Shown here: positions 6,826 through 17,596 of the stretch, piece after piece
How positions within the stretch are numbered: position 1 is the first letter of the stretch
How the letters are laid out: each line of letters starts with the position of its first letter
Virus record (IMG/VR): IMGVR_UViG_3300031884_000002
Span: 1-64,000 of that record
Length of the DNA: 64,000 nucleotides
Direction: 5' to 3' (one strand)
Notes under the pieces: model-generated
Database searches by the model: none
The model's input: the letters and a program-made list of their open reading frames with translations, nothing else
What the model was told of the DNA's origin: nothing
Made by a program: the position numbers and the translations under genes

Positions 6826-7194
6826 TTATGAAGTTATTTCAGTAAGCCAATTATCTGAAAAATATCCAATTTCGTTTTTATTATTATAATTTTTAATGAA
6901 AAATAAAACAATAAAATCAGTTGAGTCGATATGACAAGAATGTATAAATCTCCCAATTTCCATTCCAATTAGATTTTTAAACTGTCCTATACTACGAACT
7001 CTCCAGAACTTTGTATTTTTATTATGTAAAAATCCAAATGTATCTAATCTAGATTTAACTTCTGGTAACGTTTCGAGTTTTAATTCTGGTTTCCAACCTT
7101 TGGGCCAAGTTTTAACTATATCTTCGGCACAATCTACACAAAATAAAAAGTCATTGGGAACTTCATTATTGCACATTCTACATATATTTTTCAT
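6826..7194 (-). CDS. Hypothetical protein with N-terminal CxxC...CxxC
   Basis: ORF track. Confidence 0.65.
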   Translation of the reverse strand: MKNICRMCNNEVPNDFLFCVDCAEDIVKTWPKGWKPELKLETLPEVKSRLDTFGFLHNKNTKFWRVRSIGQFKNLIGMEIGRFIHSCHIDSTDFIVLFFIKNYNNKNEIGYFSDNWLTEITS

Positions 7195-7200
7195 AATTTT

Positions 7201-8525
7201 TGGAGGAAGGAAACCACGACGGCTTTAGCCTCGTGGAGGAATTCCGACCATTCTCAATATTAACACACCACCCATCAAATGTCAACCAAAAATATCTTCA
7301 CTGTATGAAAGATTTTTTGTGTTTTGGGATTCTCACGTGTATTTATATGTAGATGAGTAAATTAACATACAACACCAAGTTGATATTCACGGACGATAAT
7401 GATAAATCAAATATCATTAAAATGCTTGACTCCCAACTGTTTGTGTGGAATGAATGCTCAAAAATCCAATTTACTCTACCGAAAAACTCCATCATTGATT
7501 TACATTCTAAATTTTATAAGTCATTCCGAGAAAATAACCCAACCATTCCATCCCAAGTAGTAATTTCCGCAGAACAGTCCGTATTATCTACATTTAGGAC
7601 AATTAAATCAAATAAACAAAAAATAAAAAATCCACCAATTAAAAAGAATTTGTCAATTCGTCTTGATAAAAGAACATACTCCTATAAAAATGGAACATTT
7701 AGTTTGATTAGTTTGGGAAAACGAGTTAAATGTCAACCATACATATTCCCTAAATTACGAGAATTAATGTCTAAATATGCCTTTTGTGACCCATTGCTTT
7801 TTGTTCATAATAACGATATTTACATTGCTTTAACTTTTACCATTTCCGAAGTTAAATCTCAAAACAAATTAGCGATTGGAGTTGATTTGGGATGTGTGAA
7901 TTTAGCGGCAACAAGTGAAGGTAAATTGTATAAATGCGCATCATTTAATGCTAGAAAGAGACAATTACGACATCTCAAATCGGCATTAAAATCTAAAGGG
8001 ACGAAATCATCCCGAACCCATTTAAATAAATTACGACATAAAGAGCATAACGTAAACAAGAATATGTCTCATAATTTGGCAAATAGAATCATCCAAGACA
8101 CGACTGCCGATGTTATTGTCTTAGAGAATCTTAAATCATTAAAAGTTAAGAAGCATAAGTATCAGAATAAAAATAGAATTTCTCAAATTCCAATGTTTGA
8201 ATTGAGAAGAATAATTACCTATAAGGCACTCTTAAATGAGAAAACGGTTATCGTAGTAAATCCATCATACACAAGTCAAATTGACCATCGAACTGGAAAA
8301 CTCGACGGTCAAAGAATTGGTGGCAGGTATATCGGAAAAGATGGTCAAATATTACATGCGGATATTAATGCGGCTTGTAATATAGGACTTCGTTCCAAAC
8401 TCCCATGCTCAATAAATAATTATTATGCGTGGCAGGTGAAAGTCAACTCACCAATCGTATGTAAACCTTCTGCTAGTCGGGAAGTATTACAAGCACCTAT
8501 CCCTTTAGGGTAGGTGTTGTTTGAC
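7201..8525 (+). mobile_element. IS200/IS605-family tnpB-only element (IS1341-like); left boundary approximate (7200-7212)
   Basis: Left-end hairpin CCACGA-CGGCTTTAGCC-TCGTGG; right-end hairpin CACCTATCCC-TTTA-GGGTAGGTG followed by TTGTTTGAC; no tnpA. Confidence 0.8.
7353..8513 (+). CDS. tnpB: TnpB RNA-guided nuclease
   Basis: RuvC motifs GVDLG, VLENL, HADINAACNI; YTSQ motif without the usual CxxC zinc finger. Confidence 0.9.
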   Translation: MSKLTYNTKLIFTDDNDKSNIIKMLDSQLFVWNECSKIQFTLPKNSIIDLHSKFYKSFRENNPTIPSQVVISAEQSVLSTFRTIKSNKQKIKNPPIKKNLSIRLDKRTYSYKNGTFSLISLGKRVKCQPYIFPKLRELMSKYAFCDPLLFVHNNDIYIALTFTISEVKSQNKLAIGVDLGCVNLAATSEGKLYKCASFNARKRQLRHLKSALKSKGTKSSRTHLNKLRHKEHNVNKNMSHNLANRIIQDTTADVIVLENLKSLKVKKHKYQNKNRISQIPMFELRRIITYKALLNEKTVIVVNPSYTSQIDHRTGKLDGQRIGGRYIGKDGQILHADINAACNIGLRSKLPCSINNYYAWQVKVNSPIVCKPSASREVLQAPIPLG

Positions 8526-9689
8526 TGTAGTTAATACGTCTTTAACTACATCTTTATTATATGATGCTTCTTTTTTCTGTCTTGTTGGAATCTCTGGTAA
8601 TGGCTGGTCGAGCACTCCTTCCATTGGTTGACAATATTTAATCCATTTCGTAGGCACTGGACTAATAATGCCAATCATTCCACCAACAATAGCACAATTT
8701 GTATCAACATCACCAGAACATTGACAGACTTCAATGATTGCCTTTTCATACATTTCATCGATTGGATATTTTCTCAATGCTTTAATGGTTAAAAATACAC
8801 ATAGAGGAACGGTATCTTGGCAAGTAACATGAGTTCCATTTCCTAATACTTCAATTAGTTTTGCCAATGGAGTCCCAATGGATAATTTAGATGCTTTTTC
8901 AATTCCATTCCACACTTCTCCTTTGGGAACAAAGCTCAATAATGATTTATAATGGATTTCAGAATCTATTGTTAAATTTGGATTTACTTTCATCAGTTCA
9001 ACCATAGAAGCAATAAAGTTTGATAATAATGCTATTGCAATAGCCCCAGCAACTCCTTCAGGGTGACTGTGAGTTGGTTCGGCGGATAATGTGGCTTGTT
9101 TAATAACATCAGTTATTGGACTTCCATAGTAATAAGCACCCAATGGAGGAATACGCATAACCGAACCATTTCCACATGAACCTACTAATTGTTGGTCGAT
9201 TGGTTTATTACCCGATAAACTTTTCAAAGCCGCCAAACTTTCTTTTACTGATTTTCCAGCGGCAAGACCGGCAATAACATTATCGGTTGAAGACATTCCT
9301 TCACTTTTTTTAAATGTTAAATTGGCTTCTCTCCAAGGTTTTCCTTCATATATATCTTTTAATACCTTACGAGTCATCAACCCATATCCCATATATTCTC
9401 CCCCATCTTGATGATACATAAATCGTTTGGAGAACTCCATTGCCAAATCATCTTGTAATATTTCTTTATTTTTAAGAATATGATTAAATAATACAATTGC
9501 TTCATCCGTATCATCAGAATATTGAAAAGAGGCTCCTCGTGAATCGATATTATTTATTCCAAACTTAGATATTCCTTCATCGAATGCTTTTAGAATATCG
9601 GTTACATTATAAAGTTGCCCCATATTTCCAATACAGTCGCCAACCCATAATCCTATTAATGATTTTAATGCTAATTCTTCGTTATTCAT
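8505..9689 (-). CDS. ADP-ribosylglycohydrolase (second paralogue)
   Basis: GDCIG, YSDDT, GNGSVMR, HPEG, GDVDTNCAIVG; its last codons lie inside the IS right end. Confidence 0.9.
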   Translation of the reverse strand: MNNEELALKSLIGLWVGDCIGNMGQLYNVTDILKAFDEGISKFGINNIDSRGASFQYSDDTDEAIVLFNHILKNKEILQDDLAMEFSKRFMYHQDGGEYMGYGLMTRKVLKDIYEGKPWREANLTFKKSEGMSSTDNVIAGLAAGKSVKESLAALKSLSGNKPIDQQLVGSCGNGSVMRIPPLGAYYYGSPITDVIKQATLSAEPTHSHPEGVAGAIAIALLSNFIASMVELMKVNPNLTIDSEIHYKSLLSFVPKGEVWNGIEKASKLSIGTPLAKLIEVLGNGTHVTCQDTVPLCVFLTIKALRKYPIDEMYEKAIIEVCQCSGDVDTNCAIVGGMIGIISPVPTKWIKYCQPMEGVLDQPLPEIPTRQKKEASYNKDVVKDVLTTVKQHLP

Positions 9690-15247: not shown

Positions 15248-15637
15248 TGGTGGAGATGAAGGGAATTGAACCCTTGTGTTATGAACTAATCTTAAATAAT
15301 ACTATATGTTTAGTTTATTATGATTTTAACTGATATATCAACAAACAATTTACTTCAGTCGAGATGAATTAATTGATTCATCACCAAACAAATGATTGGA
15401 ACCATTTGCAGTTTTTTTCTGCTATTAGATGTAAGAGTTTTAGCAGAAATCCAACTCTTACATACTGTTCAGGCTATTGCTAACTCTTCACAGTCAACGG
15501 ACAAATCTACTTCATCCATTGCAGCCAATTGAGATAATCGATTAGCATTTAATTTTTGACTGATTTTTATCGTAGCCAACAATCATCTACGACATACATT
15601 ATTTAGTCAGAGAACATAGTCGATACCTGTCATCCCC
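15248..15637 (-). ncRNA. ssrA: tmRNA; tag ANRLSQLAAMDEVDLSVDCEELAIA*
   Basis: 5' GGGGATG / 3' CATCTCCACCA with G3-U70 wobble; T arm GGGTTCAATTCCC; resume context TTAAAT-GCT; upstream TTGACA-N17-TATATT. Confidence 0.93.
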
Positions 15638-15682: not shown

Positions 15683-15958
15683 TTATAAAACTTCAATAGA
15701 ATTGATTATTAGTTGTATTCCTGAGTAATTATCTTTCATATGTAATTTATATTTAATAAATTCATCGGAGATTAAACTATCAGACAAAAATTTATCTATA
15801 CAATATTGTGTATCTTTGTCTGAAAAATTAAGAAATTCACATTGCGATTTAATTCTATCAACAAAACAATCAAATTCTTCATAAGTTCCTCCGTGCCACA
15901 TTGCTCGTAATGGATAATACGGCAACCGATTTAATAATAACCTATCATATGGTGTCAT
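15683..15958 (-). CDS. Hypothetical protein
   Basis: ORF track. Confidence 0.6.
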   Translation of the reverse strand: MTPYDRLLLNRLPYYPLRAMWHGGTYEEFDCFVDRIKSQCEFLNFSDKDTQYCIDKFLSDSLISDEFIKYKLHMKDNYSGIQLIINSIEVL

Positions 15959-16149
15959 ATAAAATTAAATATTCTATAAATCAAAAATAAACATACATTG
16001 GTATGATAAACCATACATTCGTTCGCCATAACCATACATTTTATAATCATACTTTATACATATATTAAAAAAATATAACCGGTGATATTTTATGAATGTC
16101 ATTCATTTTAATTTTTTTAATGTTTTTTTATTTTGAATGATATTTATAC

Positions 16150-17301
16150 TTGATGATAACTTATAATACACAAATTATACCAGAATGTAAAGAAGATTTT
16201 GATAACTTGAAATCTATACTTGAAATGGAACAATTGGTATTTAATTTTGCATCTAAACAACAATTTACAGAAAATAAAAAATCATTAGTAGTATTACATT
16301 CCAAAGTATATAGAAATATAAGAAAGAAGTATGCGAATATCCCATCCCAAGTGATTATCAAAGCCGAACAGGACTGTTTATCTAAATATAGAAGTATAAA
16401 ATCTAATCAACATAAAATAAAAAAACCAATAGAAAAAAGAAAATTATCACTTAGATTGGATAAACATTTATATTCTCATCCTTCAAAGGATGAAAAATAT
16501 TCAATCAGAATAACAACTATTAGTGGCAGAAAAATATTTAAGTTTATCATTTATCACAAACTGAAAGAATTACTCGATAAGTATAAATATCGTGATCCAT
16601 TAATTTATGAGAATAGCGGTAAATTATTCATATCATTCACATTTGAAAATAAACCGCAAGATAAATTAAAACAAAAATTAGCATTAGGAGTAGATTTAGG
16701 AATTAGACGTGCCGCTGGGACTTCGATTGGAAAACTTGTCATAGATAAAAAGTTTAATGGTGAAAAACGAAAACTTAGATTTAATAAACGAAAATTACAA
16801 TCGAAAGGAACTAAATCAGCAAGAAAACATTTATTTAAATTAAAACATAAAGAACATAATAAAAATAAAAATCAAACTCATTTAATAGCGAATGAGATAT
16901 TAAAAACAAATGCCGATACAATTGTATTGGAAAATCTAAAAGGAATAAAAAGAAAGAAAACAAAATATCAAAATAAGCGTTCAATCGGACAAGTTCCGAT
17001 ATATGAACTTCGTAGAATAATAACCTATAAGGCAGAGAACCAAGGTAAAACGGTTCTTTTAGTTTGCCCTTCTTATACTTCTCAACGAGACTCCGTAACG
17101 GGTAAAATTGAAGGTGAAAGAAGAGGTTGTAGATTTTATTCTAAGAATGGACTTATTTATGATGCAGATATAAATGCAGCAATAAACATTGCTAAATTAT
17201 CTAAACTTCCCATATCACAGACTAATAATTTGACTTATGGGCAGGCATCCATCAATGTGCCATATATATATAAATCTTCTACTAATGTAGAAGTAGTATA
17301 A
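16150..17301 (+). CDS. tnpB: Second TnpB nuclease, intact RuvC triad, no recognisable left end
   Basis: GVDLG, VLENL, YDADINAA; clear paralogue of 7353-8513; likely ATG at 16153. Confidence 0.9.
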   Translation: MMITYNTQIIPECKEDFDNLKSILEMEQLVFNFASKQQFTENKKSLVVLHSKVYRNIRKKYANIPSQVIIKAEQDCLSKYRSIKSNQHKIKKPIEKRKLSLRLDKHLYSHPSKDEKYSIRITTISGRKIFKFIIYHKLKELLDKYKYRDPLIYENSGKLFISFTFENKPQDKLKQKLALGVDLGIRRAAGTSIGKLVIDKKFNGEKRKLRFNKRKLQSKGTKSARKHLFKLKHKEHNKNKNQTHLIANEILKTNADTIVLENLKGIKRKKTKYQNKRSIGQVPIYELRRIITYKAENQGKTVLLVCPSYTSQRDSVTGKIEGERRGCRFYSKNGLIYDADINAAINIAKLSKLPISQTNNLTYGQASINVPYIYKSSTNVEVV

Positions 17302-17333
17302 ATATTTAAGATTAATTCTTAGGTATATTCGAT
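17239..17333 (+). ncRNA. Degenerate omegaRNA/right-end scaffold of the second tnpB
   Basis: Aligns with 8431-8525: GGCAGG..., CTTCT/AGAAG stem, then TATTTAAGA-TTAAT-TCTTAGGTA hairpin. Confidence 0.55.
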
Positions 17334-17497
17334 AATTCAGTACTCCATTTTTTAATAGCGGCAGTTATTTTCTTCAATTCTCTAAGTTCTCTATTAAAAG
17401 ATTGCGTTTCTTCTTCGGATACAGTATCATAATATTTATCAATGATATTTAATACCTTTTTCAATAGTTCCTTACGGTCTTTTTCAAATATTTTCAT
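17312..17497 (-). CDS. Hypothetical protein converging on tnpB2
   Basis: ORF track. Confidence 0.6.
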   Translation of the reverse strand: MKIFEKDRKELLKKVLNIIDKYYDTVSEEETQSFNRELRELKKITAAIKKWSTELSNIPKN

Positions 17498-17499
17498 TC

Positions 17500-17596
17500 A
17501 GATAATAAATATCAGATAGAATTATGAAAAATGAATGAAGATAATAAATATCAGATAGAATTATGAAAAATGAATGAAGATAAAAATATCAGATAA
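17500..17596. repeat. Tandem repeat, 39-bp unit, about 2.5 copies
   Basis: AGATAATAAATATCAGATAGAATTATGAAAAATGAATGA at 17500 and 17539, partial copy at 17578; no spacers. Confidence 0.9.

What the first reader, a model, noticed from the sequence alone, without database searches (positions are those of the whole stretch)
16020..17355. Second TnpB looks domesticated: catalytic triad intact, RNA scaffold structure kept, transposon ends lost
Seen: no left-end hairpin upstream. The 3' region aligns with the first element. Its terminal hairpin has drifted to AT but still pairs (TATTTAAGA/TCTTAGGTA, two G-U), and it ends TCGAT rather than TGAC. The gene sits directly behind a TATTTATA motif. Inference: an immobile RNA-guided nuclease with a fixed guide (from about 17334, AATTCAGTACTCC...), possibly used like a homing endonuclease against competing phage alleles.
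Basis: partly seen in the sequence, partly recalled or inferred. Interest (0 to 1): 0.65.

Follow-up and report, generated by a model that had tools for sequence, protein, structure and literature searches.

The report
Stranded TnpB nuclease in jumbo phage
A transposon-derived RNA-guided nuclease gene in a 354-kb lake phage has lost the DNA ends it needs to jump, yet its protein and guide-RNA scaffold are still under selection; it most likely survives as a stationary homing gene, and it has not been shown to be a domesticated weapon.

Summary
Window 16153-17301 encodes an intact 382-aa TnpB with RuvC residues D181/E260/D339. A covariance model built only from relatives matches its 3' end over the full length, ending exactly at 17333. 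All local helices pair, including an AT-rich terminal hairpin that is stable as RNA but not as single-stranded DNA. No left-end hairpin is detectable, and the family's invariant right-end signals (CAAGC, TTGAC) are mutated. The same phage carries a Y1 TnpA and canonical copies elsewhere.

Removing 15959-17333 rejoins two minus-strand ORFs with an ATGA stop/start overlap at a GTCAT site, so this is an old, precise IS605-type insertion. The protein is under purifying selection: terminal-branch dN/dS is about 0.15, and 137 of 138 conserved columns are kept. Synonymous change is suppressed fivefold where the gene overlaps the guide-RNA scaffold.

"Domesticated" is not shown. The sister copy (79% identity) sits at a different locus in a related phage. 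End erosion recurs across the clade. The flanking genes are ORFans. The guide matches nothing except its own flank.

Best reading: an immobilised TnpB-omegaRNA module aimed at the uninterrupted allele of its own locus, persisting by TnpA-independent homing. Activity is untested.

The parts
15683..15958 (-). 91-aa ORF (MTPYD...). Its start codon is the CAT of the GTCAT that abuts the element's left boundary.
   Evidence: It has no homologue other than itself among 5.8 billion proteins.
15954..15958 (+). GTCAT: the presumed target site, and candidate TAM, 5' of the former left end. Canonical relatives have TTCAT here; L012 appears to have GTCAT.
   Evidence: TTCAT directly precedes the left end in nine relatives plus copies 1 and 3 (L018 has TTCAC). 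The junction was reconstructed.
15959..16152 (+). Former left end and 5' UTR. There is no left-end hairpin. It contains three CATACATT repeats (15992, 16012, 16033) and the element-borne TATTTATA box at 16141-16148. Positions 16101-16136 were not sent to search tools.
16153..17301 (+). tnpB copy 2: 382 aa, RuvC D181/E260/D339 intact, zinc-finger cysteines absent as in the whole clade.
17179..17333 (+). omegaRNA-like scaffold. Helices lie at 17209-17241, 17244-17261, 17276-17293 and the terminal hairpin at 17302-17326. It ends in TCGAT.
   Evidence: Covariance model hit at 112 bits. The single-sequence fold reproduces the helices, z -5.1. Family covariation is shown.
17334..17353 (+). Predicted fixed guide (AATTCAGTACTCCATT...). 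It is antisense to the C-terminal codons of the 61-aa ORF.
   Evidence: The boundary comes from the model end and from the family's right-end boundary. The only perfect match in the genome is this site.
17312..17497 (-). Convergent 61-aa ORF. Its last seven codons and its stop lie inside the right-end remnant. Without the element it would end ...WSTEL* with an ATGA overlap onto the 91-aa ORF.
7195..8525 (+). It is a canonical non-autonomous element with TTCAT at 7190-7194, a left-end hairpin at 7209-7241, tnpB at 7353-8513 and a right end finishing in TTTGAC at 8525.

Best explanation
Window 15959-17333 is an old IS200/IS605-type insertion. It went in at a (T/G)TCAT site between two translationally coupled phage genes.

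It has since lost everything a Y1 TnpA transposase reads. The left-end hairpin is gone. The right-end hairpin no longer folds as single-stranded DNA. The invariant CAAGC and TTGAC are mutated. It is therefore stuck, although the phage carries a TnpA in another copy.

The TnpB protein and the RNA scaffold overlapping its 3' end are still under purifying selection. The locus therefore most likely still makes an RNA-guided nuclease whose guide is fixed by the right flank (AATTCAGTACTCCATT...). The only natural target of that guide is the uninterrupted junction (TCAT followed by the guide sequence), which is the same locus in a co-replicating phage genome that lacks the insertion. Cutting it would either copy the gene across by recombinational repair (TnpA-independent, 'non-restorative' homing, a gene drive) or eliminate the rival genome.

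Shown: the anatomy, the boundaries, the loss of transposase signals, and the constraint on protein and RNA. Inferred: expression, RNA loading, the TAM, cleavage and homing.
For: - Family membership and the catalytic triad.
- Canonical ends were defined on independent insertions in relatives. They show strong covariation: 95.6% of cells paired, 22 pairs with compensatory changes, 0 of 500 shuffles as high.
- Copy 2 matches the RNA model over its full length, ending at 17333, with all local helices standard. Its own minimum-energy fold gives the same helices, z -5.1.
- The hairpin is stable as RNA but not as DNA.
- The left end is not detectable.
- A TnpA (123 bits) and canonical ends are present elsewhere in the genome.
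- Deleting 15959-17333 restores an ATGA stop/start overlap.
- Constraint on the protein: 1 deviation in 138 conserved columns, against a family median of 1. Terminal-branch dN 0.054, dS 0.35, ratio 0.15, within the range of canonical relatives.
- Constraint on the RNA: synonymous difference to the sister copy is 0.12 in the 35 scaffold-overlapping codons against 0.58 in the gene body (Fisher p = 2e-5), with similar non-synonymous difference.
- Precedent for TnpA-independent spread and for homing: PMC11870625, PMC10055086, PMC13565253.
Against: - There are no expression data; no RNA run holds the locus.
- No insertion-free allele was seen, and the read-mapping test could not be run.
- Several positions invariant in canonical relatives are changed. 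GUCAA is AUCAA (also so in L028). CAAGC is UAAAU. Three of the 5 pairs of the predicted long-range helix are non-standard.
- The minimum-energy fold pairs the first four guide bases with the scaffold.
- The sister lineage has deleted the terminal hairpin outright. The hairpin may therefore be dispensable, and its retention here could serve another purpose, such as transcript ends between convergent genes.
- No member of this zinc-finger-less clade has been assayed.
- The dN/dS values are approximate (Nei-Gojobori plus least squares, dS near saturation for distant pairs), and part of the measured constraint may predate immobilisation.
- The junction argument is only moderately strong; I estimate about 1 in 3 for the frame alone.
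Confidence: 0.55

Rival explanations
1. True domestication. The immobile nuclease now serves the phage, for example by cutting a competing phage or host sequence other than its own empty site, and it is inherited vertically as an ordinary phage gene.
For: It is immobile but constrained. It is identical in 18 contigs of the same phage population. A local repeat array has replaced the left end and could be new regulation.
Against: The guide matches only its own flank in the genome. No TAM-plus-guide match above chance was found in viral, metagenome or prokaryote genome collections. The sister copy lies at another locus in a related phage. No orthologous locus exists in relatives to show vertical inheritance. 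The 18 contigs are 100% identical, so they give no independent support.
Confidence: 0.15
2. A relic on its way to decay. The copy was immobilised fairly recently, the measured constraint is inherited from its mobile past, and it has no present function.
For: Copy 4 of the same genome is a pseudogene with two TAA stops and an N-terminal truncation, so decay does happen here. Several scaffold invariants and the long-range helix are altered. No expression evidence exists.
Against: The non-coding ends have diverged to about 46-51% identity by hand alignment, with a strong shift to A+T, while a 382-codon frame stays open at 27% G+C (GC3 17%). The terminal branch carries dS of about 0.35 at dN/dS 0.15. 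The hairpin keeps all pairs through changes on both sides. Synonymous sites in the scaffold are protected along the path to the sister copy, which is also end-eroded.
Confidence: 0.2
3. Still mobile. It is moved by a different TnpA that reads TTGAT-type right ends, as in its subclade (L024, L028, L029).
For: Four lineages share TATAA plus a (T/C)GAT end in place of TACAAG plus TTGAC. This correlated change might mark an alternative recognition code. L028 keeps a G+C-rich hairpin.
Against: There is no left-end hairpin in copy 2, L024 or L028. The copy 2 right-end hairpin is unstable as DNA. The only TnpA in the genome sits in an element with TTGAC-type ends.
Confidence: 0.05
4. An RNA-guided binder or regulator of the TldR type rather than a nuclease.
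For: The transposon ends are lost, as in TldR loci (PMC10705468). The zinc-finger cysteines are absent.
Against: The RuvC D-E-D triad is intact and invariant. The zinc-finger loss is shared by the clearly mobile relatives and by the TnpA-linked copy. The C-terminal domain is full length. No conserved partner gene exists.
Confidence: 0.05

Closest known systems
IS200/IS605-family TnpB-omegaRNA modules (ISDra2, ISFba1; PMC8612924, PMC10055086)
   Same: The same protein family and fold class, with the RuvC D-E-D triad. The scaffold RNA overlaps the 3' end of the gene and runs to the right end, and the guide is set by the flank. Relatives have subterminal hairpins at both ends, a 5-nt target motif and a Y1 TnpA.
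   Different: This copy has no left-end hairpin, a right-end hairpin that folds only as RNA, and mutated cleavage-site and guide-box motifs. It cannot be a transposon any more. The whole clade lacks the CxxC...CxxC zinc finger. The host replicon is a 354-kb lytic-type phage genome.
TnpA-independent TnpB gene drive and 'non-restorative homing' (plasmids: PMC11870625; concept for co-infecting phages: PMC13565253)
   Same: The proposed mode of persistence is the same. The nuclease cuts insertion-free copies of a multicopy replicon, so that insertion-bearing copies win or convert them. No transposase is needed.
   Different: In those cases the element is an intact IS with working ends. Here the ends have eroded, so homing would be the only route left. 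Nothing has been tested experimentally for this locus.
Free-standing phage homing endonuclease genes (T4 seg/mob; reviewed in PMC13565253)
   Same: A stationary nuclease gene sits between phage genes. It would bias inheritance of its locus in mixed infections or exclude a rival's markers.
   Different: Target recognition would be by RNA guide plus TAM and not by protein. Self is distinguished from non-self by the presence of the insertion and not by sequence substitutions.
TldR, TnpB-like nuclease-dead repressors (PMC10705468)
   Same: Both are TnpB descendants without recognisable transposon ends or tnpA that keep a guide RNA found with covariance models. Some are phage-borne.
   Different: TldRs have lost RuvC catalysis and the C-terminal domain, and they sit beside a conserved target or partner gene. 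Here the triad and the length are intact, and no partner is conserved.

Membership tests
TnpB (OMEGA RNA-guided nuclease, Cas12f-like) | Sequence and fold match to the WED/REC/RuvC/TNB architecture | tested here: met
   Pfam PF07282 at 52.8 bits, above its cut-off; PF01385 at 25.6 bits, below its 30.5-bit cut-off. PHROG 506 at 7.9e-40. phmmer hits to AsCas12f and Cas12f chains. Foldseek top hits are Cas12f and ISFba1/ISDra2 TnpB at E about 1e-12, but TM is only about 0.3 and the model's pLDDT is 68.8, with a low-confidence RuvC region.
TnpB (OMEGA RNA-guided nuclease, Cas12f-like) | RuvC catalytic D-E-D triad | tested here: met
   D181, E260 and D339 are invariant in a 30-sequence alignment and align to GIDLG / MEDL / ADYNAA of AsCas12f.
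TnpB (OMEGA RNA-guided nuclease, Cas12f-like) | CxxC...CxxC zinc finger in the TNB domain | tested here: not met
   SQRDSVTGK and FYSKNGLIYDAD stand where SQRCSECG and FKCRACGYE align. Copies 1 and 3 and the relatives show the same pattern. This is a clade feature and is not specific to this copy.
TnpB (OMEGA RNA-guided nuclease, Cas12f-like) | Structured guide-RNA scaffold overlapping the 3' end of the gene, ending at the guide | tested here: met
   Covariance model at 112 bits, positions 1-155, ending at 17333. Fold z -5.1. Family covariation. Suppressed synonymous change. No Rfam family covers it.
TnpB (OMEGA RNA-guided nuclease, Cas12f-like) | RNA-guided, TAM-dependent DNA cleavage | not testable with these tools
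   This needs expression and a cleavage or interference assay.
IS200/IS605 transposon (mobile element) | Left-end subterminal hairpin | tested here: not met
   The left-end HMM finds nothing in 15940-16100. That stretch has no stable fold. A pattern scan for the left-end motif finds only the left ends of copies 1 and 3, plus one weak chance-like match near 68.1 kb.
IS200/IS605 transposon (mobile element) | Right-end hairpin foldable as single-stranded DNA, plus a conserved cleavage site | tested here: not met
   As DNA the fold is -2.0 kcal/mol and 46 of 200 shuffles do as well, against -8.2 kcal/mol and 1 of 200 for copy 1. It ends in TCGAT against TTGAC in canonical relatives. CAAGC has become TAAAT.
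IS200/IS605 transposon (mobile element) | Y1 TnpA in cis or in trans | tested here: inconclusive
   There is none in cis. One TnpA (123 bits) lies in the copy 3 element at genome 110886-111269. Whether it can act on these ends is untested and seems unlikely.
IS200/IS605 transposon (mobile element) | Insertion 3' of the family's target motif | tested here: inconclusive
   GTCAT lies at 15954-15958, against TTCAT in eleven elements and TTCAC in L018; L012 may also have GTCAT. The reconstructed junction is coherent.
TldR (nuclease-dead TnpB-derived repressor) | [quoted passage not shown] | tested here: not met
   The triad is intact and the protein is full length.
Homing element (functional class) | Presence/absence polymorphism at the same site among related genomes | not testable with these tools
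The neighbours have no homologues elsewhere. Searches for the empty-site pattern were empty or at chance level.

The most novel reading that the evidence does not exclude
Copy 2 and similar end-eroded relatives would be a natural class of free-standing, RNA-guided homing nuclease genes in freshwater jumbo phages. They would be ex-transposons that gave up transposition entirely and persist only by gene drive or allele exclusion in mixed infections. That would make them a living intermediate between selfish TnpB and nuclease-active domesticated descendants such as Cas12.
Probability: 0.3. Interest if true: 0.7.

Novelty: new variant of a known kind. Interest (0 to 1): 0.5.

Why it matters
TnpB is the ancestor of Cas12, and how a transposon nuclease leaves its transposon is an open question. 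The known exits are nuclease-dead (TldR) or already CRISPR-linked. Here, within one genome, the four copies span the stages: an autonomous element, a mobilisable one, a pseudogene, and a copy that has lost only the transposase-facing DNA signals.

The contrast is internally controlled. The hairpin folds as RNA but not as DNA, and synonymous sites are protected only in the scaffold. That pattern argues the nuclease-RNA pair can be selected on its own.

If the copy is active, it would be a compact, zinc-finger-less TnpB with a known scaffold. It would also be a test case for TnpA-independent homing in phages, which has so far been proposed only on theoretical grounds. If it is inactive, it is an ordinary decaying IS.

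Tried and rejected
Nothing was laid.
- Handling of 16101-16136 afterwards. By oversight, locus L001, which contains them, was among the 17 targets scanned with my own RNA model. Nothing from those places was reported or used.
- Synteny. The 91-aa and 61-aa neighbours have no relatives in IMG/VR, in five jumbo-phage records or in the 5.8-billion-protein set (91-aa ORF only). The 387-aa and 269-aa proteins further upstream gave no usable anchor.
- No close phage record in the GenBank phage collection.
- Cryptic left end. An eye alignment suggested one at about 15990-16060, but the HMM does not support it, so I rejected it.
- Branch models. I used Nei-Gojobori distances fitted to a FastTree topology instead.
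- Guide targets. All 13 metagenome 18-mer hits and the single prokaryote genome hit are at chance level and lack flank similarity. The 24-nt match in L035 lies at a NUDIX/glycosyltransferase gene junction with unrelated proteins and an ATCAT motif, so I judged it chance.
- The structure model is only moderate (pLDDT 68.8, RuvC region poor). It was used for family assignment only.
- TATTTATA as a phage promoter was rejected. The box is shared with elements in other phages and is not clearly enriched in the genome.
Full report
SETTING

The window is the first 64 kb of a 353,772-bp IMG/VR virus record that CheckV rates as complete. It is about 30% G+C. It carries seven tRNA genes and a tmRNA (the tmRNA is confirmed by Rfam at 82.9 bits). 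It recurs in lake-water metagenomes.

The genome holds four TnpB-like copies:
- Copy 1 at 7353-8513.
- Copy 2, the finding, at 16153-17301.
- Copy 3 at 108690-109799(-).
- Copy 4 at 91217-92146, a pseudogene with two TAA stops and a missing N-terminus.

It also holds one Y1 TnpA transposase (PF01797, 123 bits) inside the copy 3 element. The genome therefore contains an autonomous IS605-type element. That makes the state of copy 2's ends informative.

THE GENE

Copy 2 encodes 382 aa.
- It hits Pfam Cas12f1-like_TNB above its cut-off and OrfB_IS605 below its cut-off.
- It hits PHROG 506.
- Cas12f and TnpB are the only solved relatives by sequence and by fold. The model is moderate, so I use it for family assignment only.
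- D181, E260 and D339 are invariant among 30 homologues.
- It is 49% identical to copy 1 and 70% to copy 3.
- The four zinc-finger cysteines of the TNB domain are absent. This is also true of copies 1 and 3 and of the relatives examined, so it is a property of the clade.

WHAT INTACT ELEMENTS OF THIS FAMILY LOOK LIKE

Fifteen relatives in IMG/VR contigs (66-75% identity), together with copies 1, 3 and 4, all end the same way. They have CAAGC, then a hairpin of about 9 bp whose sequence varies while its pairing is kept, then a few bases ending in TTGAC. Unrelated flanks follow.

Most relatives carry a left end with a similar hairpin about 130 nt before the start codon. Nine relatives and copies 1 and 3 have TTCAT directly before the left end; L018 has TTCAC and L012 apparently GTCAT. 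By analogy with IS608 and ISDra2 (my own knowledge), TTCAT is the target site and hence the likely TAM.

RNAalifold and a pair count on 19 sequences support five local helices. In the pair count, 95.6% of cells are paired, 22 pairs have changes on both sides, 0 of 500 shuffles reach the observed values, and slid registers reach at most 46%. A sixth, long-range helix shows one-sided changes only. No Rfam family covers this RNA.

THE ENDS OF COPY 2

Right end:
- A covariance model built from 13 relatives, without copy 2, matches 17179-17333 over all 155 positions at 112 bits. Every pair of the local helices is standard. Three of the 5 pairs of the long-range helix are not.
- From the last coding stem to the end, copy 2 has the same 41 nt as its relatives. 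By hand alignment only about half are identical, and most changes are G/C to A/T.
- The hairpin keeps all its pairs, two of them G-U. As RNA it folds at -7.6 kcal/mol and 3 of 200 shuffles do as well. As single-stranded DNA, the form a TnpA reads, it reaches only -2.0 kcal/mol and 46 of 200 shuffles do as well. Copy 1 reaches -8.2 kcal/mol with 1 of 200.
- The whole 175-nt stretch folds on its own into the family's helices, z -5.1.
- CAAGC and TTGAC are changed to TAAAT and TCGAT.

Left end:
- A left-end HMM finds nothing in 15940-16100.
- That stretch has no stable fold.
- Only the roughly 60 nt nearest the start codon still align with relatives, including the TATTTATA box. The box is therefore element-borne.

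BOUNDARIES

Joining 15958 to 17334 gives, on the minus strand...TGG AGT ACT GAA TTA TGA with the ATG of the 91-aa ORF overlapping the stop as ATGA. This is a typical coupled gene junction at a GTCAT site.

The last seven codons of the present 61-aa ORF are read from the right-end remnant. This agrees with a precise IS605-type insertion spanning 15959-17333. On its own the evidence is only moderately strong.

SELECTION

- Copy 2 differs from the consensus at 1 of 138 columns that are at least 95% conserved in 123 homologues. The family median is also 1.
- It is sister to the L024 lineage with 0.98 support. The pairwise values are dN 0.138 and dS 0.91. A least-squares fit gives its terminal branch dN 0.054, dS 0.35 and a ratio of 0.15. 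Terminal branches of relatives with canonical right ends (L005, L006, L008, L011) give 0.07-0.16.
- In the 35 codons that overlap the scaffold, the synonymous difference to the sister is 0.12, against 0.58 in the rest of the gene (p = 2e-5). Non-synonymous differences are alike at 0.10 and 0.13. This is the signature of an RNA constraint and not of recent gene conversion. It lies on a path between two lineages that have both lost their transposase signals.
- The frame stays open at 27% G+C.

RELATIVES AND SYNTENY

- The exact protein occurs on 18 contigs. The two that were fetched and compared (L021, L022) are 100% identical to the window, and the rest were reported as similar places with the same neighbours, so this is one population.
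- The flanking ORFs have no homologues anywhere searched. Orthologous loci cannot be compared.
- The nearest other lineage (P0005 cluster, 79% identity) shares the early stop (CAA to TAA) and a ...GAT end. Its right-end hairpin and left-end hairpin are deleted outright.
- That lineage sits in a related phage, whose flank proteins are 44-80% identical to genome 98.5-105 kb. There it lies between other genes, and the corresponding interval in this genome has no TnpB.
- Two further lineages (L028, L029) also combine the early stop, a TTGAT end and a missing or truncated left end. L005 has lost its left-end hairpin through a deletion between repeats, and L008 shows no left-end hairpin.

End erosion with an intact gene and scaffold is therefore recurrent in this clade, and presence across phages is patchy.

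THE GUIDE

- The 16 nt after 17333 have no second match within 2 mismatches in the genome.
- The reconstructed empty junction is absent from IMG/VR.
- TCAT plus 14-16 nt of guide gives only chance-level hits in metagenomes and prokaryote genomes.
- Nothing points to a host or foreign target.

INTERPRETATION

The data fit an immobilised IS605-family module whose nuclease and guide RNA are still selected. The only target its guide specifies is the insertion-free form of its own locus.

That is the known selfish role of TnpB: cutting vacant sites so that recombination restores or spreads the element (PMC10055086). It has been shown to work without TnpA in multicopy plasmids (PMC11870625), and it has been proposed on theoretical grounds for co-infecting phages (PMC13565253).

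I therefore read copy 2 as a stationary, RNA-guided analogue of a free-standing phage homing endonuclease gene. I do not read it as a gene shown to serve the phage. TldR-type domestication (PMC10705468) does not fit, because the triad is intact.

The main rival is a slowly decaying relic. It is disfavoured by the contrast between eroded ends and protected coding and RNA sites, but it is not excluded without expression or activity data.

LIMITS

- No reads could be laid.
- No RNA data exist for the locus.
- The dN/dS figures are approximations.
- The TAM is inferred.
- No member of the zinc-finger-less clade has been tested.
- After I kept positions 16101-16136 out of search queries. Locus L001, which contains them, was inadvertently included as a scanned target.

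Noticed in passing
genome G000:C1:108644-111330 (outside the window; loci L002, L020): Copy 3 is an autonomous IS605-type element. It has a left-end hairpin at 111280-111312, a Y1 TnpA (127 aa, 123 bits) on the opposite strand, and a 161-aa Cys-rich ORF with no Pfam hit whose stop overlaps the tnpB start. Then come tnpB and a canonical right end. The tnpB frame departs from the family's C-terminus (ends ...KHLSL).
   Followed up: partly
window 7190-8525 and 8505-9689(-): Removing copy 1 joins the ADP-ribosylglycohydrolase-like ORF in frame to the downstream Cys-rich ORF (...DVLTT|MKNICRMC...). Copy 1 may therefore have split one longer gene at an internal ATGAA. The present C-terminus, VKQHLP*, is read from the right end.
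   Followed up: partly
window 16153-17301 and all relatives (alignment A4): The whole clade lacks the CxxC...CxxC zinc finger of the TNB domain while keeping the RuvC triad, mobile ends and a TnpA partner. It may be a naturally zinc-finger-less active TnpB lineage.
   Followed up: partly
window 15987-16040: Three copies of (A)A(A/C)CATACATT lie at 15992, 16012 and 16033, spaced 20-21 nt apart, in the stretch where the left end should be. The motif is not repeated genome-wide. It could be an operator- or iteron-like site between the divergent 91-aa operon and tnpB.
   Followed up: partly
window 17500-17595: A 39-nt tandem repeat (2.5 copies, 98% matches) lies just upstream of the 61-aa ORF on the minus strand. 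Each unit carries a weak promoter-like pair of hexamers.
   Followed up: no
window 15248-15637(-): A phage-encoded tmRNA (ARAGORN; Rfam RF00023 at 82.9 bits) lies just beyond the 91-aa ORF that abuts the element's left boundary. The window also holds seven tRNA genes.
   Followed up: partly
window 17190-17201 with 17331-17342: In the minimum-energy fold, AAUUAUC of the scaffold pairs perfectly with GAUAAUU, which spans the scaffold/guide boundary, and UGCU pairs with AGUA. The canonical long-range helix (AUCAA with UUGA) is broken. This could be chance in A+T-rich sequence, or a shifted closing helix that masks the start of the guide.
   Followed up: no
relatives L006, L007, L009-L011, L013, L014, L024, L028; window 7190-7198 and 15954-15958: The family's target, TTCAT, is the reverse complement of ATGAA. 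In the cases examined, the CAT is the start codon of a gene on the opposite strand, so the elements sit immediately 5' of that gene's ATG.
   Followed up: partly
L035:3821-3844 (metagenome contig Ga0172381_10021571): A 24-nt identity to the reconstructed empty junction (...KKWSTEL* with the ATGA overlap) lies at a NUDIX/glycosyltransferase gene boundary. The proteins are unrelated and the motif there is ATCAT. I judged it chance (roughly p = 0.02 after 13 hits).
   Followed up: yes
genome G000:C1:333107-333709(-) and 117841-118416(-): Two further weak TnpB-like tblastn matches (29% and 27% identity, E 2e-9 and 5e-4) were found to the sister protein. They were not examined.
   Followed up: no
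L024, L028, L029 and window 17296-17333: TATAA (the early stop) and a ...GAT end always occur together, in four lineages that do not form one clade in the protein tree. TACAAG and TTGAC always occur together in the rest. This could be a correlated change in the presumed TnpA guide box and cleavage site, or right-end exchange between elements.
   Followed up: no
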